From contig NC_135264.1 in the NCBI RefSeq assembly GCF_964204865.1, forward strand, positions 10,230,001 to 10,294,000: a DNA stretch of 64,000 bases, written 5' to 3'. The DNA is from Styela clava. Its lineage: Eukaryota. Below the pieces are notes generated by a model. The model searched no databases. It was given only the letters and a program-made list of their open reading frames with translations, and had not been told where the DNA came from. Numbering within the stretch: position 1 is the first letter of the stretch; the number at the start of each line of letters is the position of its first letter. The position numbers were made by a program, and so were the translations under genes. This document shows, piece after piece, positions 5,675 through 24,036 of this stretch.

Positions 5675-7541
5675 CTTAGAATTAACCCATGAGACAGATG
5701 ATGGGTAAAAATCATCACGGACTGCGTACTTATATGTATTCTACGTAAAAGCGATCAATGGGTCTACTGAATTTTTTATTATTATAATTTCTGCTAGTGC
5801 GACTTTTAGAAGTGATTTTAATAAATTTGAATATCCTTATGTTTATTTTAAAATTACTCAATAAATAAACAAAAAACGCCATTTTGTATTGCGGAACGTC
5901 ATGTGACTTAATGCCCATAACATAAGACGCGTGGCGTTCATATTTTATCAAAAATTGTCAAGGTTATGAAAGGTGAATGATTCATTTTGCATTCACAAAT
6001 CTAAAATTTTATTTGTAGATTCAGTAATGACATGAATCACTTTTGTGTTTTAAAACTCAAATTTCCATTGGAAGCATTTGAATAAAATTTTTGTTGGAAG
6101 TGTTTGTTTCTAGAAATATAATATATGTACCTAAAGAAAATTTCGAAGCTTGTTTTTATATTTATTTATCGCAAATTAAATATTTTGAATTAACTAGGAT
6201 TAACTATATTATATATTTATATTCTCCATATCATCAATTTAAACTCCTTCCATAAGTCGAACCACATTTACTTGTTTCAATATACGATCCTATTCCTAAC
6301 CTGGTTTATTCTTGAAAAGAGACCACACAGAATGATTCACATGTGTTCACATATATTTCAACGTGTAGTTTAGAAATAAATAAATAAGACAATTAATTTG
6401 AGGGTTGGCTTTTGCTATGGACAATTCTATTTCTTTTTGTATCTTCTTGGAATATTCAATCACAGTCCAACACATTTGCATTCTTCAGCCTGAAATAAAA
6501 CAAGTATATTTTGGTAGTATATTTTATACCAGATTTTTCAGAGAAATTTTATTTAATTCCAATATGCTCCGGAGTACAATAACTCCACAACAGGCCAAAT
6601 ACATCAAATAAAAACTGATTTGTAATAAAAACATTGCGTACAGGAATATCGGTCTTGTCCGTTTGTATAATGTTTACAGGAGTATCAAATTTAAGAAAAC
6701 ACCACACCTCAACTTCGACCTCCAAATATGCAAGTTTTATCGGTTTCTTTATAACAATCATCCACAGTTTTCTTTTTGATCCAGTTTTGGAACGGTATGA
6801 CAAATCTTGCTACATAAGAATTCTCCTTGGCATCTTTCGTGTTCATATCTGAAATTATTCAACAGACGTTACCAGGTTATTATAGCAGAAAAAGAAATAT
6901 ATATTTAATCAAAATTTGTAAACACTTTTCCACTATGAAATGTGAATTTCCCTGCTTATTGAGACTTACTTGCACTTGTTTGATGGTGCGTATTGGTTGA
7001 ATATGCCCTGATATACATCGAGTGTGTAGACTGAACATCCAAACCATGGGTGGCAACAAGTATATTCTCTTGTTTTTGGCATGACTGGGAAAGAAGCGTT
7101 GTCACATTTGTTTCTGATCTCCAAATTTTTACAACCATGAAATCCAGGCCTGCAGAAACAAAACATAGCTTTATAAAAACACAAAAATATTGAAAATAAT
7201 AGGGTGGAATTATCTTTCATTCATAAGTTTATGTGTAATTATTCGAAAGATGTTTTGATATAACAATATAGTGCCGGACATGTTACCATAAACCATTCCT
7301 GAAAATTCCTACTGGGGTGCGAGCTTAGTGCAGTGTATACTTACTTAGTGCAAAGAGATGATTTTGATTCATTTTCCATTTTTGATGCTGCTATGCGGAA
7401 TGGTGCTCCGCGTATTCTTGTCAACTCTTCTGGAGTCTAAATGTGTTCATATAATTGTATTCGGAGAACTTTTCTGGTTAAACAGATTTTTGTGTGATAT
7501 AAATTTGTGATAAACTACATTACTGAAGTCCACATACCCTT

Positions 7542-8499
7542 CGGTTTTTTCTTTTCTTTTTATTAATAAAAACATCACATTATATAGATACAATATCACA
7601 TAATACATTTATATAAACACAATACTAATTGCAATTCAAAAAAACGAGCACATAATAGTTTTCCACTTCTTCTTATGGATTGACAGTTTACCATTTTTAG
7701 TTTCAATAATCTTCACAGTTTATAGCATTTTTTATCATATATAAAAATTGGCAAAATTGAAGCCTTTCATTACGCAGTTTACATTTGTATATAAAATATC
7801 TGGCACACAATAAAAGACAATTTATACACTGGTTTTGCCCTACCCCCAATAACATTTCTCTGTGTCAAATTAAGGTTTAATCCATACTCAACGGTTAGCC
7901 AAGCGTTAACTATTTCCCAAAATTGCTGCATAAAATCACAGAGATAAAATAAATGTAACACAGTTTCAACTTGCATATTACAAAATGTACATTTTGGACT
8001 TTGTGTTTTATTTTTTCTATATAGCAGGTCATTAGTGGGCACTGCTCGCAAAGCAAATTTGACATGGAGTGAACGAAGTCTGGATTCAATAGAGCAAGAA
8101 AAAACTTTTTCATACAATGTCAACCAATTATCTAAGTTCCTGCACAATTCTTTTGACTATTTTTCTATTTTTTCAATTGGCTGCAAAATTTTTACATTAC
8201 AAAGCTTATCATATATGTAACGAGAGGTTTTTTTAATGCTTCTAATATCTTCGATCAGACTAAGATGCGGATTGACTTGTGAAGTTTTTGATAATTCAGT
8301 TTTCCAATCCTGGGATTGACATGATATAATTTTTAAATACGCTAGCATGTCGTCATAAAAACTAGAAAAACAATGATGATGAAAAATATACGGAAATATT
8401 GCAATTTGCTGTTTAGAATCACAAATATCTTCAACGAATCAAATATTTTTACTATTCCAATTATTCATATATAAAAGTTTTCCTTGACAAGATATATGG
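7542..8499 (-). mobile_element. 5'-truncated L1/Tx1-type non-LTR retrotransposon (3' end, zf-RVT region)
   Basis: ORF 7779-8147 reads ...RSLHVKFALRAVPTNDLLYR...SPKCTFCNMQVETVLHLFYLC..FW (CCHC zf-RVT motif). A-rich tail at ~7545-7567 on the minus strand. Flanked by the 10-bp TSD acataccctt at 7532-7541 and 8546-8555. Confidence 0.85.
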
Positions 8500-8605
8500 T
8501 CTACAGCAAAGACCTGCCGCCACAAGCTCTCGGGGACTTGACAGAACATACCCTTTAGCTCTGTCAAGTCCCCGAGAGCTTGTGGTGGCAGGTCTTTGCT
8601 GTAGA
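8500..8605. repeat. 46-bp inverted repeat (hairpin) with 14-nt loop
   Basis: Arms 8500-8545 and 8560-8605 are reverse complements with a single G/T mismatch. The right arm is exon-1 coding sequence of paralog A. Confidence 0.95.
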
Positions 8606-8894
8606 TCATGTTCAAGTTCAACACAAAAAAAATAACGAGAAAGAACACTTTGGCCATTTTTTTTTGACTTTGTGTTATACGAGTACTTTTCAACTTTCTT
8701 TATTGTAGTCGTCAGATGAAAATATGAATGATTGCACTTACGCCACCGTAATTATATTCAATTTCACCCCTGATATTTTCAGTTATTTTTTATACACGAA
8801 AACATTACCTAATTCCCATAGAGCGAGTAAGTAGTAATTATATATAGCAAGTAGTGAATAGATTTATGCAATATAGTCAAATAATCAAAAAAGA

Positions 8895-13273: not shown

Positions 13274-14892
13274 TTACTTGTAATTCTTTGCGAGCTGCGT
13301 GCACGTGTATTGATCGACCTAGAATTAAAAACAAATTAATTCATCAAATATGAAACCATCGGAAATCAAATTCAGATCTTTCGTGAATTAGCGAACAAAA
13401 AATACCATTTCAAATAATTTAAAATTTCGGAGCATTTGAATAGAATCATAGAAACAAGGACAAGACTCACTTTCACTACGACGTCCAATTTTGCAAGTTT
13501 AGTCGGATAGTTTTGTACGACAACCCAAAGCTGTGTTTCCTGATATATTTTGTTTGTTGCAGTAATATCCATTGTTGCATTTTCTGTCTTCATATCTAAA
13601 ATCATTAAAAGCAAAATTAGCGTTTCCTTGTTAGTGAATACTATTGTATCTAGCATTAAATGGATTATGTTAAGTTAATCAATTGATTCATCATAACATG
13701 ATATCTTAGTTGACAACTTCCACTGCAGTTGTGGTCCTGTGGAATACACTCGAGCTGTTTCCAACTTTTAAAAATGAATTGCAAATGCGATCGTATCAAA
13801 TGACTCAAAATGGCAAAATTTATATCTCCAAATCACTAGAAACGAATTGATTTCATAGGTTTGGCAAAATAAACTAAGTCATATTTAATACAGTGAAATA
13901 TGGGAAATACTCACGTTCATCTGTACGAATCTACATACTGGTTGAAACAACCTTGATAAACTTCAAGTTCATAGATGTTACATCCATAAATATGATGGCA
14001 CCACATGAATTTTGCGGTGTCAGGTATGGAAGGGCAATAGGACTTGTCGCATTCAAACCATGCACCCTTGTTCTGGCAAGCGTGATTACCAGGCCTGGTA
14101 ATACAAGTAACAGAATAAGTATAAAACTATGACACGGTTATATATAAATTTCTCATATTAGTCTAAATGCGTTTCGTTTCGCTAAATTCTTGATGTTGCT
14201 TTTGGTAAATCGTAATTGAAAATAAGCTCACAGGTATGTAACTTGTCTAATTGAACACTCCTATAATTTCTAGGATGATACTTAATATTGTTTGCAGTTC
14301 AAACTTACTTAGAGCAGTGTCTTGGCATTGACGACTCAGCTTGGGATGCAGCAGCACGAAGTTGTTGAACAGACGGCTTTTTTCTCAGCTCTTCTGGTGT
14401 TTTTATTATTAATTTGGTGGATTATTTATCTATAAATATTTATACCATATCGCAGTTACATTGTTTGAAGGAGACATTGTTGGGGTATGCAACTGGAGCC
14501 GGAATGTCCTGCTTCAATTGACAGAGGTCTCTTGTAAAGGGGCTTTTTTCGGAGTGGGATAGTTACCCATGTCACGCGTAGCATGGAAATTGTATTCAAT
14601 GTTGCCAGGTTTACAATTTGTCTCAACATTTTCGTGTTATTTCCTGATATATATTTATCGTTTTCTTTTCTTACGTTACATGAATATTGAAAAAGAATAT
14701 AATGTATGGGGAATGAAATCTCATCTTGTAGGTTGGAATGAACTATAAAATTAATGATTGATTTAACGAACTATGTTTTCCACTTACCTTGACATCAGAA
14801 AAGTCTTCGAGTGCTTTCTTTGGAAGTTCCAATGCGTAGTTCACGCTGAGGTTTAACACACAAGCCAAAACGAAAACAAAGAGCTTGGCCAT
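13274..14892 (-). pseudogene. Spaetzle/neurotrophin-like cystine-knot gene, paralog B (pseudogene)
   Basis: Exon 1 14892-14788 (MAKLFVFVLACVLNLSVNYALELPKKALEDFSDVK); exon ~14400-14309 (TPEELRKK...RHCSK); exon ~14094-13915 (PGNHACQN...FNQYVDSYR*, with TGA replacing the conserved Cys at 13917-13919); exon ~13585-13471 frameshifted; last exon 13318-13274 (VDQYTCTQ, first Cys of CxC lost). Confidence 0.8.
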
Positions 14893-17800
14893 GTTTTGCC
14901 GTCGTTGTACTACGTCTTTATCTTGGGAGTATGTTGAAGTTGAATGAATGGTTGTAATTTTTTATGACTTTTATAGGAACTTCTTGTCTACGTTGTTTTT
15001 AAAAAAGACCTGATTCCCGTTCCCGCAAGCTGTTCGAGTTACTAGTCATCGGGCGTTCCAACACAATATGTTACTCAACGAAACTCATGAATTACTAATA
15101 AATAACTTATATCGTTGCATCTTCTCTAATATTTGGTATACATATATCAACATTTACAGAATATTATGTATACTAAATAACTAAATGTGTACTATTGCTG
15201 TACCAAAAACAATTCGACTGGAAATGAGTGCTTCCCAAAAAGATCAAAGATTTAGAATCCATGCAAAGTAAAATGCTGTAGATTAAATTACGGTATATTA
15301 CATTTACTAATGACAACTCATATAGGCTTATGTTATAGTTACAAATACGATATTTTCCATAGAATAACCTCAGAAGGACTTTGAATATACGATCTATTTA
15401 TATTATACTCAACACTTAATGATGTCGTAACTGTAACTCGTTATATATAAACAGACCCCAGTGTTAATCTGGAGTCAATATCAACACGCTTTCTGGTTTA
15501 AGATCCGGTGTTGCAATATGGTTAGTTACCAGATAACTGAAATTGAGTATTTTATGTGTAAATGTAGATTTTAGAATATATTCTAGGAATTAGTTAAGAA
15601 AATGTCCAATTGGAATCAGAGTGTCTAATGTGCTTTATTTTCCTTAAATCATTTTGCAATTATCGTTATGTATTATCTCACTTGCATCAACTTGAGGGGA
15701 AATACTCCGTATAAATACGATGAACATGAAAGTATTTCCAGTTGAAAACATTTTTTACATTTAGGTAAAAACACGACAGAACGTATGTATTTTGTTGAAA
15801 CCATGAATAAATTGCGATACAGAATGAATCACCTGGTTTTGTATAATTTCGTTTTCTATAAATTAAACATTTCATTTGTGTTCAACAGTTCATTTGACAT
15901 TATATACAATATAAAATAAAAAAACGAAATTTTGTGTTACCATTATTCGATCTCATTGAGTCATACAACGTTGGAAATTGAAAAATACATTGCGGTCCCT
16001 GATTCTTGAGAAATTTAATAAAATTCAAATCAGCTAACGCATTAGCCTGAAAGCTAAATCGACTGTTATTTTGTTCCAATTTTAATTAAAACCTGTAATG
16101 TAAAAAACGTCGCCAGAAATAATTTTCTACTTTTTCTTGAGTTTTATATGTTCTATTAGCTAATATTCATATTGTCACAGTTTGTTCTGTGAACCGTGGT
16201 TCGTTAAATCACCGGACCAAGGGTTCCGGATTGGTTAGCTATTGTAAAAGCCAACTCGACACAATCACAAAAATTACAGATGAAGCAAAAAACATAGAAA
16301 TATATTTCCACTCGCACTTTTTTGGGGTGATCGGAGTCTTATAATACAGATTAGAATTCGGATGTACATACAATTTTTATGCCCGGCACAAATGATCGGT
16401 GTCCATAACAATATACAAATCATAAATATATTTATACAACATACACACCTATTGTGGTCCGGAACAATACTTGACCCAGAGTGCAGACTAGATTGGACGG
16501 GAGACATTTGACGTAAAATCAGGTCGCAATATTTGCTTCCTTGAGATAAATATTTAACTCAAATTTACTCAACATCAAATATACTCAAAGATTTTTCGAA
16601 AAAAAAAATGGAAAACAGAAAATAATCGATTTTTTAGGGCAAAAATAAAAATTTTAGATTCCTGAACCTAAAAGAATCACTCGTCTGATTTTATTTACTT
16701 TTCTTCTAAAATATTAATATATTCTAAGCAAAAATTGTTCAATATTTGCATGTATATAAAAATAACCTAAAAAAGAGAGTCAAAGCGCCCTATTGAGTCA
16801 GATGACGTTACGAAATATTGTGCAATTCACTGGATAATTCAATAACAAACATAAAGATAGAATTATTCAAATTGTTAATCTCACACCTAAAATTCCCACG
16901 AAATATACTAATAGTAAAAATATCAGGTATTTTATTGATTTTGCATTTATTTATAACCCACAAATAGATCATCAAGAATTGATCAGGGATGATTTCGAAC
17001 AACCTGACAAAAACTACCGTCACTCAAAAAGATTTTCGTCCCCGAGGCAATACACGTAATAATATCAGGAAAGAAAAATAATTGAGCAATAGCATTGCGC
17101 TAAAAGTGGGAATTTATTTAGAAAACCAATCAATCAATTTTATTCGGTCACTCTGATACAAACAAAACACAAACCAACACATGCCAAATGACGAAGTAAA
17201 TGATCAAATGAATCACAATATGGCTGAAAATTCATTTCATGCTTTGTTCACAAATGATGCAAAAGAGCTAACATACCTATTCCTTGGTATAAATCCGTGA
17301 GAAGTTTTTGAATGCAGTTGCTATGTTAGCCTATTTCTGGGCGTTTTCAAGGCTTCGTCTCACGGCCCATATCCGTGGTAAGGATCTACAAGTGTTTAAT
17401 AACTTACTTATACATTTTTCAACAACGTCTTAGCATAACTTAACTAATAATAACTAAACAGGACTATGGAAAGGCTGCCCAACTCAACGCAAGGTTGAGC
17501 AGTAATAATTAATATTCATCCGCTCGCTAACAGCTGATTCGATTCAATTGTTACGTCTTGCAGAAGTCATTGTTCATTGCCGAAATGTAGAGAATATAGG
17601 ACAGATCGTAGCACATATTTCTTGTAGTAAAAGCGTCTTTTCCGTAAAACGTGCAACTTTTGGAAGTGGGAACATGATGTGCGCTACGAGACTCACTTTC
17701 TACGCGTTTTTCAGGGCCTCGGCTCGCGGCCTATTACCTTGACATCAGAAAAGTCTTCGATTGCTTCCTTTGGAAGTTCCAATGCGTAGTTCACGCTGAG

Positions 17801-20252
17801 GTTTAACACACAAGCCAAAACGAAAACAAAGAGCTTGGCCATGTTTTGCCGTCGTTGTACTACGTCTTTATCTTGGGAGTATGTTGAAGTTGAATGAATG
17901 AATGAAAAGTTGTAATTTTTTATGACTTTTATAGGAATTTCTTGTCCTCGTTGTTTTTAAAAAAGTCCTGATTCCCGTTCCTGCAAGCTGTTCGAGTTAC
18001 CAGTCATCGGGCGTTCCAACACAATATGTTACTCAACGAAACTCATGAATTACTAATAAATAACTTATATCGTTGCATCTTCTCTAATTTTTGGTATACA
18101 TATATCAACATTTACAGAATATTATGTATACTAAATAACTAAATGTGTACTATTGCTGTACCAAAAACAATTCGACTGGAAATGAGTGCTTCCCAAAAAG
18201 ATCAAAGATTTAGAATCCATGCAAAGTAAAATGCTGTAGATTGAATTACGGTATATTACATTTACTAATGACAACTCATATAGGCTTATGTTATAGTTAC
18301 AAATACGATATTTTCCATAGAATAACCTCAGAAGAACTTTGAATATACGATCTATTTATATTATACTCAACACTTAATGATGTCGTAACTTAACTCGTTA
18401 TATATAAACAGACCCCAGTGTTAATCTGGAGTCAATATCAACACGCTTTCTGGTTTAAGATCCGGTGTTGCAATATGGTTAGTTACCAAATAACTGAGTT
18501 GAGTATTTTATGTGTAAATGTAGATTTTAGAATATATTCTAGGAATTAGTTAAGAAAATGTCCAATTGAAATCAGAGTGTGCTAATGTGCTTCATTTTTC
18601 TTAAATCATTTTGCAATTATCGTTATGTATTATCTCACTTGCATTAACTTGAGGGGAAATACTCCGTATAAATACGATGAACATGAAAGTATTTCCAGTT
18701 GAAAACATTCTTTACATTTAGTTAAAAACACGACAGAACGTATGTATTTTGTTGAAACCATGAATAAATTGCGATACAGAATGAATCACCTGGTTTTGTA
18801 TAATTTCGTTTTCTATAAATTAAACATTTCATTTTTCAACAGTTCATTTGACATTATATACAATAAAAAATATAAAATAAAAAAACGAAATTTTGTGTTA
18901 CCATTATTTGATCTCATTGAGTCATACAACGTTGGAAATTGAAAAATACATTGCGGTCGCTGATTCTTGAGAAATTTAATAAAATTCAAATCAGCTAACG
19001 CAATGACCTGAAAGCTAAATCGACTGTTATTTTGTTCCAATTTTAATTAAAACCTGTAATGTAAAAAACGTCGCCGGAAATAATTTTCTACTTTTTCTTG
19101 AGTTTTATATGTTCTATTAGCTAATATTCATATTGTCACAGTTTGTTCTGTAAACCGTGGTTCGTTAAATCACCGGACCAAGGGTTCCGGATTGGTTAGC
19201 TATTGTAAAAGCCAACTCGACACAATCACAAAAATTACAGATGAAGCAAAAAACATAGAAATATATTTCCACTCGCACTTTTTTGGGGTGATCAGAGTCT
19301 TATAATAGATTAGAATTCGAATGTACATACAGTTTTTATGCCCGGCACAAATGAACGGTGTCCATAACAATATACAAATCATAAATATATTTATACAACA
19401 TACACACCTACTGTGGTCCGGAACAATACTTGACCCAGAGTGCAGACTAGATTGGACGGGAGACATTTGACGTAAAATCAGGTCGCAATATTTGCTTCCT
19501 TGAGATAAATATTTAACTCAAATTTACTCAATATCAAATATACTCAAAGTTTTTTCGAAAAAAAAAATGGAAAACAGAAAATAATCGATTTTTTAAGGCA
19601 AAAATAAAATTTTAGATTCCTGAACCTAAAAGAATCACTCGTCTGATTTTATTTACTTTTCTTCTAAAATATTAATATATTCTAAGCAAAAATTGTTCAT
19701 TATTTAGATGTATATAAAAATAACCTAAAAAAGAGAGTCAAAGCGCGCTATTGAGTCAGATGACGTTACGAAATAGAAAATGGCGGTATTGTGCAATTCA
19801 CTGGATAATTCAATAACAAACATAAAGATAGAATTATTCAAATTGTTAATCTCACACCTAAAATTCCCACGAAATATACTATTAGTAAAAATATCACGTA
19901 TTTTATTGATTTTGCATTTATTTATAACCCACAAATAGATCATCAAGAATGGATCAGGGATGATTTCGAACAACCTGACAAAAACTACCGTCACTCAAAA
20001 AGATTTTCGTCCCCGAGGCAATACACGTAATAATATCAGGAAAGAAAAATAATTGAGCAATAGCATTGAGCTGAAAGTGGGAATTTATTTAGAAAACCAC
20101 ATGCCAAATGACGAAGTAAATGATCAAATGAATCACAATATGGCTGAAAATTCATTTCATGCTTTGTTCACAAATGATGCAAAAGAGCTAACGTACATAT
20201 TCCTTAGTATACCCGTGAGAAGTTTTTAAATGCAGTTGCTATGTTAGCCTAT
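14785..20252. repeat. Recent tandem duplication (~2.55-kb unit, offset 2950 bp) of paralog B exon 1 plus its upstream region
   Basis: 14785-~17335 and 17735-~20252 are nearly identical (e.g. ORF-track twins 16274/19200 and 16808/19725), separated by a ~400-bp spacer. Confidence 0.93.
17738..17842 (-). other. Orphan duplicate of paralog B signal-peptide exon 1
   Basis: MAKLFVFVLACVLNLSVNYALELPKEAIEDFSDVK followed by a GTAAT donor; homology to intron 1 stops just after the donor. Confidence 0.85.
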
Positions 20253-21018
20253 ATATGTAGCCTATTTACTTTCACACAAATCAGTCGAAATCTTATAAAC
20301 ATTTGCCAAATAATAAATAAAACGGTTGCCACACACACACACACAGATCAGGGTTTTTTAAACGAAGTTTTGACTTCTTTCATTGAAGTCGAAGTCGTAA
20401 GATTAGAATTATTGAAATATTAGACCTTCAATGGTGATGAAATAAATGATTTTTTTTAATCCAATGGGTTTACTGTGAGTTCTTAACAATTTAATAAAAA
20501 GCTTTGCATACCCTAAACTTCTTACTATCAAGATTTAATTTTCTCGAGGTTTGGAGGGTGGTCAAAATTTATTACAACTCGTAGCAGGGTTCGAAATTTT
20601 TTTCAAGTTGGGATATGGAGTCTTGAGCCCCGATGTATAGCCTGCGATGGCCTCACTATATTTTCCCCCAAAAAAATTATTTATTAAACCGATTTTGGAA
20701 AATGAAAAGCTGAAATTTTTTACACCTCTTACAAGCAACGTTTTCTCATTTTGTGATGATAGGCAGACATAGTGATCGCAAGCGATTACGCTAAAATGTA
20801 AAAGTACTCATATCGAAACTACGGCACGGCAACCGTAATTTAAAATAACCGCAATAATTTTTCATGTTCAAAAAGAAAAAAGAGCAAAAATAAAAAAGAT
20901 CAACGGTCAAATTTAGTATAAAATGGGCTTCTGAATTGCAATTATTCACAATTTCATTCAACAACTCCAGAAGAAGAGAGAAAACAAAACGTCTTCAACG
21001 ATATAAAAATCGAAAAAC

Positions 21019-22358
21019 ATGGCAAAATTATTCTTTCTCGTTATTTTTTGTGTGTTGAACTTGAACATGATCTACAGCGTAGACCTGCCAGCAAAAGCTC
21101 TAGAAGACTTGTCAAAAGAACTAAAGGTATGCTGACTTCAGTAATGTACTATATCAAAAATTTATACCACACCAAAATCTGTTCAACTAAAAAAGTCCTC
21201 TGAATTTATTTATATAAACACATTTAGACTCCAGAAGAGTTGACTAGAACACGTGGGCAACAATTCCGTGTAGCAGCATCAAAAATGGAAAAAGAATCAA
21301 AATCATCGCTTTGCACAGCGTAAGTATATATTGTACAAATCGGGTACCTCGGTAGGAATAGTCACGCATAGTTTATAGTAATATTGTCCGGCACTATATT
21401 GTTATATCAAAACATCATTTGAAAAATTCCACGTAAACATTTGAATAAAAAATAGTTCCACCTTTTTAATGTTTTTAATATTTTTTTGTTGTGACAATGA
21501 ATGATGATAAAAGATAGAATTTAATTCTGCAGGCCTGGAATTCATGATTGTAAAAATATGGGCTCATCCATAAAATGTGACAAAGCGTCTTGTCCAGTAA
21601 TTCCGAAAACAGGAGAATATACTTGGTGCCACCCATGGTTTGGATGTTCGAACTACACAATCGAGGTTTATCAGGGCCTATTCAAACAATACGTACCATC
21701 GAACAAGTGCAAGTAAGACTATAAATCATAATTCGTTTTGAAAAAGGTTTTTTTATGTACATTCATATAAGTTTTTTAATCACATGGTAGAGTAACACGC
21801 TTTATAAATCATTTCAGATATGAAAACGAATTATGCCAAGGAGGATTCTTTTGTAGCAAGATTTGTAGTACCAAAACAAAACAGGAACTAGCAAAACTCT
21901 GGATGGTTGTTTTAGAGAAACCAATAAAACTTGCACAGTTGGATGTCGAAGTTAAGGTAAGTACTTGGACGTGTACTGTCTAATAACTAAGTATCGTTTT
22001 GAAAGGTCTCATATCCAACAAACCTATTTACACCTAATACGTGCCAATCAAAATTTCATAAGAATTTTCACTTTATAGATTCAATTTCAATACCAGGTTC
22101 GCCCGGTTCAGTTTAGACCTTAACCTTTATTTACATTTATTTAATTTTTTTTTATTTTCTAGAGAAAATTCTATGAGCTCCATATTTATTATCCGACTTT
22201 CTAGATTACTATGCATGTATTTAAATTTGACACAATTAGAAGCATTTACCTTGCAAATAAGACATATATATTATTGATTCTAATTTTTTTTTATTCAATT
22301 TCAGGTCAAGGAATGCGAATGTGTTGGTCTCGAATGGAACCCACTAATGGATGTATAA
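21019..22358 (+). CDS. Secreted cystine-knot protein, Spaetzle/neurotrophin-like (paralog C, intact, 190 aa)
   Basis: GT-AG exons 21019-21126, 21228-21319, 21533-21712, 21818-21956 and 22305-22358 (573 nt, phases 0/2/2/0). Protein: MAKLFFLVIFCVLNLNMIYSVDLPAKALEDLSKELKTPEELTRTRGQQFRVAASKMEKESKSSLCTAPGIHDCKNMGSSIKCDKASCPVIPKTGEYTWCHPWFGCSNYTIEVYQGLFKQYVPSNKCKYENELCQGGFFCSKICSTKTKQELAKLWMVVLEKPIKLAQLDVEVKVKECECVGLEWNPLMDV. Hydrophobic signal peptide, 12 Cys after the signal, terminal CxC. The gene model is solid; the family call rests on motif resemblance. Confidence 0.8.
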
Positions 22359-22859
22359 CCTGATGATGGCAAAATTTCGGAAAAATATCATTTCATTTAT
22401 TTTATTTGTGAGCTCATTAAAACTTAACCAGCATTAACACTTGTGAATTTGTTGTTATGTGTTTTAAAGGGGAACATTTACAAGCAGATTTTGGACGTTG
22501 TTACTTTCAACAAACTTTGATGATGTAGAGCTTTTCCCCAGCTTTGAATTTAAAAGATTATCTTGAACCTTTGGTTTTGTGCACAGAAGTTATCCCAATT
22601 CAGCAAGACGGTTCAAATTCAGGGTAAAAAGATATTTGGTTATTGTCAAACAATAGTACCCGGTTTAGATATTGCAGTTGTAAATAAAGGAGGGTCACAG
22701 GTCACAGCACTGGCATGTATATAATATTATTATTAAAAATGAACGGTTTACAAAGCTAAAACCGATATACAGTATATCCATATATCAAAAGATGCAAGAG
22801 GAATTCTGAGTGGCTATATATATTAGAAAAAACGTATTCATTGTTGTGTAGCAGTCCAT

Positions 22860-23400
22860 AAACCCCGATTTAACTCATCCGATTTTCGAGTCGAGTCAGT
22901 GTTCATACAGTCGAGTCACACTGTCGGTTAGTCCGAATCATTTGATATGAAAGACTCGAGTCATTTAAAATCTTCGATAAATGATCACACTCGAGTCCAA
23001 GCCAGGTCGATTCAATGACTTGAGCCTCCGCAACACTGACTACGTTGTTTTTATGGGACAAGAGGATGTTTAAGTTATTGCAATTTGGATTTAACGTTGA
23101 GAGGGCCAGCAGGCCGAAAGCATATTAGTTGGATACCTATTTATATGGATTGGCTTTATTCGTATATAAGTACATTGGTAGACCGTGTTGGGGAAACACG
23201 AGTCTGTGACTTGACCCGAGTCACTTTATTTGAAAACTCGTAGTGACTGGACTCCAAATCGGACTCCACTCACCGCGAGGAATCAAGTCGGCGGTGATTA
23301 TACCTCAGACTCCAAATTTGAAATAGCTTTGGGACTCGTTTGTCTCGTGACTCGATTTGTGTCGATGCCGATGAAATGCTGAAAACCTCATTCAGTTTCA
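22860..23400. mobile_element. GACTCGAGTC-rich degenerate MITE-like element (related copies ~36190-36545 and ~47050-47390)
   Basis: Dense gactc/gagtc motifs recur at the same position downstream of collectin copies L1, L3 and L5. Confidence 0.45.
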
Positions 23401-24036
23401 TCTCAGTCAGAAATGTAGAGAATATTCTGTTGATAACATGCTTATCGATCAAAATCGAATCAAAATCTTCACTCCCCAGTACTACATGGCTGACGCATTT
23501 AAGTGATGTAAACGAGACTTGATAATAAAGCAAACACGATAAACATAAAAAAAAACGATTTAACTACCTGCTTGTTACTGTTGTTTGTGAATTTCAAAAT
23601 TGCTGAACGGAAAAGACAAAATTCGTTGTTTTTTTCATTTTTAATACCGGATATTACAATACTAGATGCGTGCTAATGAATAATGTTAAAGATTGTAATA
23701 TTGTATCGTAAAGGGCGCGTTATTTTTTTTTTTAACTTTCTGTACAAATTTTTGAACATTGTTCTCTTGGCGACAAAAAATCATAAAATTGCCAAGAAAT
23801 TTAAAATGCACTTAAACACAGAATTTAAAATTTAAAAAAAATTAGGTTTATGTATTAGGGTGGCGACGATTATTACGATTGTCCTAGTAACTTATCACAA
23901 TAATGCCATGCATTATTGTGATAAGTTACTTTTCAAATTATTTGTCGCCCGATCCTTGATTGGTGGTGATGTTTACTGTTTGTAATTAGAATAAATTTTT
24001 TTGTTATCCTTTATCAGAAAACTTCGAGTTTTATGT

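What the first reader, a model, noticed from the sequence alone, without database searches (positions are those of the whole stretch)
21019..22358. Intact secreted Spaetzle/neurotrophin-like cystine-knot gene invisible to the ORF track
Seen: a 5-exon, 190-aa protein with signal peptide, a low-Cys pro-region containing basic residues (TRTRG, FRVA) and a Cys-rich C-terminus ...IEVYQGLFKQYVPSNKC-x6-C-x9-C-x~33-CEC. Known (recalled sequences): NGF has VFKQYFFETKC...C...NSYCTTT...ACVC; Drosophila Spaetzle C106 has IVNNDEYKQAIQIEEC-x6-C...C...CCKC. The FKQY-x5-C motif, the C-x6-C spacing and the terminal CxC all line up. Inference: this is a lineage-specific Spz/neurotrophin-fold cytokine with 6 extra Cys, mostly in an N-terminal insertion. 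Ascidians are generally described as lacking canonical neurotrophin/Trk and Spaetzle, so if the host is a tunicate this may be an undescribed ligand family.
Basis: partly seen in the sequence, partly recalled or inferred. Interest (0 to 1): 0.85.

Follow-up and report, generated by a model that had tools for sequence, protein, structure and literature searches.

The report
Secreted cysteine-rich orphan gene, knot-like
It encodes a small secreted 12-cysteine protein from a Styela-only tandem family that looks like a cystine-knot signalling molecule, but no test could show that it is a Spaetzle or nerve-growth-factor relative.

Summary
Five GT..AG exons (21019-22358, +) give a 190-aa protein with a signal peptide and 12 cysteines. 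RNA-derived contigs from four runs in two studies carry all four splice joints.

The gene is not undiscovered. It is RefSeq LOC120334313, "uncharacterized protein", Styela clava. The RefSeq isoforms take a 5' exon about 30 kb upstream and so lack the signal peptide.

It belongs to a local tandem family on C19 (10.196-10.252 Mb): three intact genes, three pseudogenes and an orphan exon 1. No relative was found outside S. clava in 1.8 and 5.8 billion-protein libraries.

The Spaetzle/NGF reading is only partly supported:
- Language-model features place two family members next to Spaetzle, NGF, IL-17 and Noggin clusters (0.88-0.90), all growth-factor families recalled as cystine-knot types.
- The cysteine spacing C-x6-C ... 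C-x-C at the end of a predicted long beta hairpin fits a knot.
- Pfam, PDB sequence searches and profile comparison with Styela IL-17 and Noggin all gave nothing.
- Two AlphaFold runs (pLDDT 38-42) and the dimer test gave no usable model.
- There is no furin or dibasic site, so the "pro-region" is unsupported.

The scan noted similar "Spaetzle-like" families elsewhere in this genome. The one I sampled is not detectably related.

The parts
20917..20922 (+). TATAAA box about 100 nt upstream of the ATG. RNA contigs of the exon-1 isoform begin at 20876-20983.
21019..21126 (+). Coding exon 1 (36 aa): signal peptide MAKLFFLVIFCVLNLNMIYS plus the start of the low-Cys N-terminal region. An internal AG acceptor at 21075/21076 is the one used by RefSeq isoform X2.
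   Evidence: covered in all 4 runs; joint to exon 2 in X3; 19 of 20 residues identical to the signal peptide of paralog P0001
21228..21319 (+). Coding exon 2 (TPEELTRTRGQQFRVAASKMEKESKSSLCTA). Low-Cys, predicted helical, ends in phase 2. Holds the first Cys (C65).
   Evidence: (joint 21319>21533 in 4 runs)
21533..21712 (+). Coding exon 3 (60 codons). N-terminal Cys module C73, C82, C87, C99, C105; the NYT sequon; the strand ...VYQGLFKQYVPSNKC ending in C126, the proposed knot Cys 2.
21818..21956 (+). Coding exon 4. C133, C139, C143 and the predicted long beta hairpin KLWMVVLEKPIKLAQLDVEVK.
   Evidence: (joint 21712>21818 in 3 runs)
22305..22358 (+). Coding exon 5 (VKECECVGLEWNPLMDV, then stop): the terminal C177-x-C179.
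   Evidence: joint 21956>22305 in 2 runs
22359..22428 (+). 3' UTR with the ATTAAA signal at 22416-22421. The longest RNA contig ends at 22428.
6463..8657 (-). Paralog pseudogene A: same five exons, frameshift in exon 4, conserved Cys87 changed to Phe, retroelement (zf-RVT) fragment in intron 1.
13468..14892 (-). Paralog pseudogene B: the codon of the proposed knot Cys 2 is TGA instead of TGC, and exon 4 is frameshifted.
17768..17842 (-). Orphan copy of the signal-peptide exon (the first 25 codons are the same as exon 1 of pseudogene B).

Best explanation
The locus is an expressed protein-coding gene (RefSeq LOC120334313, Styela clava). Its family-typical transcript starts at the exon in the window and encodes a 190-aa precursor: a cleavable signal peptide, about 45 low-Cys residues predicted to be helical, and a 126-residue domain with 12 invariant cysteines.

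Shown:
- The splicing and the transcription.
- The signal-peptide-like N-terminus.
- A tandem family restricted to C19 10.196-10.252 Mb, evolving by birth and death.
- Purifying but relaxed selection.

Inferred:
- The last ~90 residues fold as a cystine-knot cytokine-like module. C126-x6-C133 and C177-x-C179 would form the ring. A Cys from the N-terminal module and C139 or C143 would thread it. Two long beta hairpins flank the knot.
- The other cysteines form extra disulfides.
- The protein is secreted without convertase processing and acts as an extracellular ligand, probably in defence or cell signalling.

It cannot be assigned to the Spaetzle, NGF, IL-17 or Noggin families. It is a sequence orphan within, at most, that superfamily.
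For: - Gene model and frame.
- All four introns joined in RNA contigs of 4 runs from 2 studies, with no depth in introns or flanks.
- Identity to RefSeq XP_039257726.2 from residue 20 on.
- Paralogs P0001 and P0002 share the signal peptide, and P0001 has the same five-exon layout and intron phases (P0002 mapped as six pieces).
- All 12 Cys are invariant in the intact copies.
- dN/dS is 0.52 against P0001 and 0.15 against P0002.
- Language-model features put P0006 31-201 and P0001 85-182 closest to Spaetzle/IL-17/NGF/Noggin-labelled clusters (0.88 and 0.90; 188 and 187 shared features; ten of ten best named hits share a family or clan with the best).
- Both AlphaFold runs, although of low confidence, give an all-beta C-terminal half with a long hairpin ending at the CxC.
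- The non-significant Foldseek list is dominated by IL-17A and also holds Spaetzle and several other chains I recall as cystine-knot factors (Gremlin, Norrin, activin).
Against: - No Pfam family at E<=10 on the exons or on paralogs P0001/P0002, and none at E<=0.1 on P0006.
- No PF16077, PF00243, PF06083 or PF05806 match at the locus in six-frame search.
- No relevant PDB sequence hit.
- hhalign against 16 Styela IL-17 domains gave probability 0.3%, and against Styela Noggin 0.2%.
- AlphaFold pLDDT was 38.5 and 41.6, so the knot topology is untested. VIA-align found nothing at Z>=2.
- The homodimer job gave no verdict.
- The tool itself rates language-model hits under 0.9 as leads only, and Cys-rich composition may bias them.
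- In three of four runs the assembled contigs join exon 2 to the distant 5' exon, out of frame, so the secreted isoform may be a minor product.
Confidence: 0.55

Rival explanations
1. The family descends from the neurotrophin/Spaetzle lineage and works like Spaetzle or NGF, as a dimeric cystine-knot ligand released from a pro-protein that engages a Toll-like or Trk/p75-type receptor.
For: - The top language-model hits carry PF16077 Spaetzle and PF00243 NGF labels.
- From recalled sequences only: the C-x6-C ring spacing equals that of Spaetzle, and F-K-Q-Y-x5-C has the same spacing as in NGF.
- The genome has TIR-domain genes that could serve as receptors.
Against: - The Pfam Spaetzle and NGF models do not match the protein or the locus.
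- NGF and Spaetzle chains in the PDB are not hit even at E<=10.
- The NGF PROSITE-type signature, recalled from memory, is absent.
- There is no RxxR or dibasic site, and the 'TRTRG' stretch is deleted in paralog P0002.
- The dimer is untested.
- Ciona was reported to lack the neurotrophin/Trk/p75NTR system (PMC2772990).
Confidence: 0.2
2. It is a highly diverged IL-17-type ligand that keeps or regained a full six-Cys knot and signals through IL-17 receptors.
For: - IL-17-labelled clusters are among the nearest by language-model features (0.83-0.90).
- IL-17A dominates the non-significant Foldseek list.
- The only hhalign stretch puts FKQYVPSNKC on the IL-17 strand RFPQW...C just before the first knot Cys.
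- IL-17s are known to share little sequence (PMC11087794).
- The genome has a large IL-17 expansion.
Against: - PF06083 finds about 32 single-exon IL-17 domains in this genome, but none in this cluster.
- hhalign probability is 0.3%.
- The spacing is C-x6-C, not the C-x-C-x2-C / C-x4-C of the Styela IL-17s.
- The domain is split over three exons here.
- Full-knot IL-17 types are reported as lost in tunicates (PMC11087794).
Confidence: 0.12
3. It is a lineage-specific secreted Cys-rich protein with a fold unrelated to cystine-knot cytokines, for example a defence, toxin-like or matrix/tunic protein. On this view the CxC ending and the language-model neighbours reflect composition only.
For: - No sequence, profile or structure method gave a significant link to any knot family.
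- By the tool's own calibration, language-model scores of 0.88-0.90 are reached by a few percent of shuffled proteins.
- The fast, birth-and-death evolution, and the fact that five of six RNA variants change an amino acid, fit defence-type effectors as well as they fit cytokines.
Against: - Two different family members and two different ranges gave the same set of neighbours, each with more than 170 shared features.
- The predicted secondary structure is the beta-hairpin pattern expected of knot cytokines.
Confidence: 0.3
4. The locus is a decaying or non-coding member of a dying family, and its transcripts are mostly non-productive.
For: - Three of the six full-length copies in the cluster are pseudogenes.
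- Contigs in three runs join the distant 5' exon to exon 2 out of frame.
Against: - The open frame is intact across five exons and all 12 Cys are kept.
- dN/dS is below 1.
- Transcripts containing exon 1 are present in all four runs, and the exon 1-exon 2 joint is seen.
Confidence: 0.05

Closest known systems
Spaetzle (Pfam PF16077) and Drosophila neurotrophins
   Same: - Secreted, with a C-terminal Cys-rich module ending in C-x-C.
- C-x6-C spacing of the proposed ring (Spaetzle spacing from memory).
- Nearest language-model clusters carry this label.
   Different: - No HMM match.
- 12 instead of 7 Cys, with an extra N-terminal disulfide module.
- No protease or convertase site.
- Dimer and Toll binding untested.
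NGF/neurotrophin family (Pfam PF00243)
   Same: - The F-K-Q-Y-x5-C strand before the second knot Cys, and the alternating hydrophobic strand before C-x-C, resemble NGF (recalled sequence, not a tool result).
- NGF clusters are among the language-model neighbours.
   Different: - No HMM or PDB sequence hit.
- Ring spacing is x6, not x9.
- The NGF signature is absent and there is no furin site.
- The domain is split over three exons.
IL-17 family (Pfam PF06083), abundant in this genome
   Same: - Small secreted knot-type cytokines in tandem, fast-evolving clusters.
- The terminal strand ends in C-x-C-V.
- IL-17A tops the non-significant Foldseek list.
   Different: - hhalign probability 0.3%.
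- The Styela IL-17 domains are single-exon and have a different Cys spacing.
- This family has candidates for all six knot Cys.
Noggin (Pfam PF05806)
   Same: - Similar length and layout: signal peptide, low-Cys N-terminal part, Cys-rich C-terminal half ending in C-x-C.
- Language-model neighbour at 0.86-0.87.
   Different: - Styela has a canonical single-exon Noggin on C14 (E 1e-71).
- This family shows no similarity to it (hhalign 0.2%).

Membership tests
Spaetzle (PF16077) | Match to the family HMM at or near the gathering score | tested here: not met
   No hit at E<=10 on the exons or on paralogs P0001/P0002, and none at E<=0.1 on P0006. No six-frame hit anywhere in the genome (exon splitting makes this a weak test).
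Spaetzle (PF16077) | Six knot cysteines forming a ring (C2-C5, C3-C6) threaded by C1-C4 | tested here: inconclusive
   Candidate cysteines with suitable spacing exist. The models have pLDDT 38-42, so the topology cannot be read.
Spaetzle (PF16077) | Pro-domain removed by a specific protease to release the C-terminal ligand | tested here: not met
   No RxxR and no dibasic pair. The 'TRTRG' stretch is not conserved in P0002. A single-Arg site for a clip protease cannot be excluded.
Spaetzle (PF16077) | Disulfide-linked or tight homodimer | tested here: inconclusive
   The complex-prediction job gave no verdict (ipSAE 0.00, fold uncertain).
NGF/neurotrophin (PF00243) | Match to the family HMM or to solved neurotrophin sequences | tested here: not met
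   Pfam; PDB sequences, E<=10.
NGF/neurotrophin (PF00243) | NGF signature around the third and fourth knot Cys (PROSITE-type pattern, recalled from memory) | tested here: not met
   The regex gave no match. The stretch here reads LCQGGFFCSKIC.
NGF/neurotrophin (PF00243) | Furin-type cleavage of a pro-neurotrophin | tested here: not met
   No RxxR in the protein.
IL-17 (PF06083) | Match to the family HMM, or profile similarity to the host's own IL-17s | tested here: not met
   PF06083 finds 32 loci over the cut-off, none in this cluster. No Pfam hit on the proteins. hhalign probability 0.3%.
Noggin (PF05806) | Match to the family HMM, or similarity to the host's Noggin | tested here: not met
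Cystine-knot cytokine superfamily (fold level) | Two long beta hairpins tied by a six-Cys knot, with C5-x-C6 at the end of the last strand | tested here: inconclusive
   For:
- Cys spacing and a terminal CxC after an alternating hydrophobic strand.
- Beta-hairpin secondary structure in both low-confidence models.
- Language-model neighbours that share a family or clan.

Against or missing:
- No significant Foldseek or VIA-align match.

The most novel reading that the evidence does not exclude
Tunicates are described as lacking neurotrophin/Spaetzle-type ligands. On this reading they carry a lineage-specific branch of that superfamily. The knot is fused to an extra N-terminal three-disulfide module, the protein is made without convertase processing, and it serves as an endogenous ligand for tunicate Toll-like (or other) receptors.
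Probability: 0.2. Interest if true: 0.7.

Novelty: new variant of a known kind. Interest (0 to 1): 0.4.

Why it matters
If the knot fold and a receptor were shown, this family would add an endogenous cytokine-type ligand to a chordate group whose Toll-like receptors have no known protein ligand. That group is also described as having lost neurotrophin signalling (PMC2772990).

As it stands, the work has three practical results:
- The RefSeq models of LOC120334313 should gain the signal-peptide first exon.
- The gene belongs to a small Styela-restricted birth-and-death family.
- Sequence methods and single-family AlphaFold runs cannot classify it.

Tried and rejected
- Pfam on each exon and on P0001, P0002 and P0006: nothing relevant.
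- Full HMMER scan of 1.84 billion representatives with exon 3: only the two paralogs plus noise.
- Word-indexed searches with P0001 and with the family alignment: only the three S. clava proteins.
- PDB sequence searches with the profile and with single sequences: nothing relevant.
- AlphaFold2 on a 7-row and a 15-row alignment, the second with pseudogene exon fragments added by reference: pLDDT 38.5 and 41.6.
- Foldseek and VIA-align on the better model: no significant match.
- Complex prediction homodimer of residues 72-201: no verdict, so it is not evidence either way.
- hhalign against Styela IL-17 domains and Styela Noggin: no relation.
- Link to the other 'Spaetzle-like' cluster at C19 12.46-12.59 Mb: I sampled 66 kb. 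Family-HMM hits there have E>=0.39 and the Cys pattern is different, so I rejected it as the same family.
- I did not hand my own joined five-exon translation to any search tool. Searches used exon references and RefSeq's own products. Exons were joined only inside local scripts, to check frame, Cys spacing and dN/dS.

Full report
**Observation.** The stretch 21019-22358 (+) holds five exons: 21019-21126, 21228-21319, 21533-21712, 21818-21956 and 22305-22358. Every intron starts GT and ends AG. The exons join to 573 nt, giving 190 codons plus TAA. No plain ORF over the locus exceeds 52 aa, so it is indeed invisible to an ORF list.

The product starts M-A-K followed by a strongly hydrophobic core (mean Kyte-Doolittle 2.9 over residues 5-15). 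Its mature part is about 170 aa, with pI about 8 and one NYT sequon. It has twelve cysteines at 65, 73, 82, 87, 99, 105, 126, 133, 139, 143, 177 and 179.

**Transcription.** Five runs hold 22-30% of the words of the locus, about the exonic share. Four of them, from two studies, were laid on 17600-23500.
- Joint 21319>21533 is in contigs of all four runs.
- Joint 21712>21818 is in three runs.
- Joint 21956>22305 is in two runs.
- Joint 21126>21228 is in one run (X3).
- All four joints are GT..AG.
- Depth is zero in the introns, from 18191 to 20751 apart from a small X3 contig at about 19116-19419, and beyond 22525, so these runs are RNA-derived.

Exon 1 with its 5' UTR (from 20876-20983) is covered in all four runs. 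The transcript ends near 22428, after an ATTAAA at 22416.

**Identity.** A full HMMER scan with exon 3 found two full-length relatives. Word-indexed searches added the gene's own product. All are NCBI 'uncharacterized protein' entries of Styela clava:
- LOC120334313, the window gene (P0006/P0007).
- LOC120334644 (P0001).
- LOC120334557 (P0002).

Model residues 20-190 are identical to XP_039257726.2 residues 31-201. The RefSeq isoforms replace the signal peptide with 30 residues from an exon that is not in the window. That exon lies at C19:10220923, about 30 kb upstream.

RNA contigs of three runs join this distal exon directly to exon 2 (loose ends at 21226). By my reading of the sequence, that junction is out of frame with RefSeq's start codon.

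The in-window exon 1 is the family-typical start. P0001 has the same signal peptide with one change, and P0001 also has the same five-exon layout and intron phases. How much of the mRNA uses it is open.

**Family.** Exon and profile searches of the whole genome find relatives only on C19 between 10.196 and 10.252 Mb.
- Three copies are intact.
- Three are pseudogenes:
  - Window 6463-8657 (-): frameshift in exon 4, Cys87 changed to Phe, and a zf-RVT retroelement piece in intron 1.
  - Window 13468-14892 (-): TGC changed to TGA at the Cys126 codon, plus a frameshift.
  - L006: a TAG in exon 3, plus a frameshift.
- An orphan exon-1 copy sits at 17768-17842.

All 12 Cys are invariant in the intact copies. 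dN/dS is 0.52 against the closest paralog and about 0.15 against the distant one, where dS is saturated. Five of the six variants seen in RNA contigs change an amino acid, and one removes the sequon. This is a young, fast-evolving, birth-and-death family.

No relative outside S. clava appeared among 1.84 billion representatives or 5.8 billion clusters.

**What fold?**

*Sequence methods are blank.*
- No Pfam family at E<=10 for the exons or for P0001/P0002, and none at E<=0.1 for P0006.
- No relevant PDB sequence hit.
- The Pfam Spaetzle and NGF models find nothing significant anywhere in the genome.
- The IL-17 model finds 32 single-exon domains elsewhere but none in this cluster.
- Noggin finds one canonical gene on C14.
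- Profile-profile comparison with 16 Styela IL-17 domains and with Styela Noggin is null, at probability 0.3% and 0.2%.

*Structure prediction failed.*
- AlphaFold2 gave pLDDT 38.5 and 41.6.
- Foldseek's best E-value was 0.64. VIA-align found nothing at Z>=2.
- The ESMFold2 homodimer job gave no verdict.

*Three weaker lines speak for a cystine-knot cytokine-like module.*
- Language-model features of P0006 31-201 and of P0001 85-182 both rank clusters labelled Spaetzle, NGF, IL-17 and Noggin first. Scores are 0.88 and 0.90 with 188 and 187 shared features, and ten of ten best named hits share a family or clan with the best. The tool rates this as a lead.
- The Cys spacing, and a terminal C-x-C after an alternating hydrophobic strand that closes a predicted long hairpin, fit a knot.
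- The non-significant Foldseek list is led by IL-17A and also holds Spaetzle and other chains I recall as knot-type factors.

The resemblance of FKQY-x5-C to NGF, and of C-x6-C to Spaetzle, rests on recalled sequences. No tool reproduced either.

**Pro-region.** The protein has no RxxR and no dibasic pair. The 'TRTRG' stretch is missing in P0002. Convertase processing is therefore unsupported. The N-terminal 45 residues are predicted helical and may stay on the mature protein.

**Context from papers.**
- Ciona was reported to lack neurotrophin, Trk and p75NTR (PMC2772990).
- IL-17s are said to share little sequence. Full-knot IL-17 types are reported as lost in tunicates and vertebrates (PMC11087794).
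- I found no paper that describes this family.
- The genome has TIR-domain genes on C10, which are possible receptors.

**Other notes of this scan.** Earlier AI notes call several other Styela loci 'Spaetzle-like', including a ten-gene cluster 2.2 Mb away. I sampled that region. Its genes have a different Cys pattern and no profile link to this family.

**Verdict.** The gene and its anatomy are confirmed, and the RefSeq 5' end can be improved. I rate a secreted cystine-knot-like ligand as the most likely reading, at about 0.55. Assignment to Spaetzle/NGF specifically is about 0.2. A non-knot Cys-rich secreted protein remains a serious rival, at about 0.3.

Noticed in passing
window 6463-8657 (-): Paralog pseudogene with a frameshift in exon 4 and Cys87 changed to Phe. 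Intron 1 is swollen by a retroelement fragment (zf-RVT, E 1e-9, at 7782-8147).
   Followed up: partly
window 13468-14892 (-) and 17768-17842 (-): A second paralog pseudogene: the codon of the proposed knot Cys 2 is TGA, and exon 4 is frameshifted. A lone copy of its signal-peptide exon lies 3 kb away.
   Followed up: partly
window 62948-63184 (+): An exon-like piece (…PECKKRESGEAVGCPKITC…YKKFFTAKMCRY) that resembles exon 3 only weakly (family HMM E 0.57). It is the subject of another first-reader note (s1-817731). I did not build a gene model.
   Followed up: partly
window 17600-17674: Very deep RNA contigs in both orientations, with many different continuations beyond 17674. There is no second copy in the window and no Rfam family. 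Unexplained.
   Followed up: partly
L030 (G000:C19:10220923, about 30 kb upstream of the gene, outside the window): The distal 5' exon used by the RefSeq isoforms of LOC120334313. In RNA contigs of three runs it is joined straight to exon 2, which by my reading is out of frame with RefSeq's start codon.
   Followed up: partly
G000 C3 2.19-2.23 Mb and 14.84-14.87 Mb, C5 14.72-15.08 Mb, C2 18.35-18.38 Mb and others: At least 32 single-exon IL-17 (PF06083) domains over the Pfam cut-off, mostly in tandem clusters. This is a large IL-17 expansion in this genome.
   Followed up: partly
L007-L013 (G000:C19 12.46-12.59 Mb): A separate tandem family of small secreted Cys-rich genes (…DEC[KE] then …C-x(4-6)-C-x-C…), noted earlier in the scan as NGF/Spaetzle-like. 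It has no detectable profile link to the family studied here.
   Followed up: partly
window 21652, 21868, 21891, 22353: RNA contigs carry the allelic changes N107T/I (which removes the only N-glycosylation sequon), S144N, A152T and V190L. Five of six variants change an amino acid.
   Followed up: no
L031 (G000:C14:16602752-16603390, -): A canonical single-exon Noggin gene (PF05806, E 1e-71).
   Followed up: no
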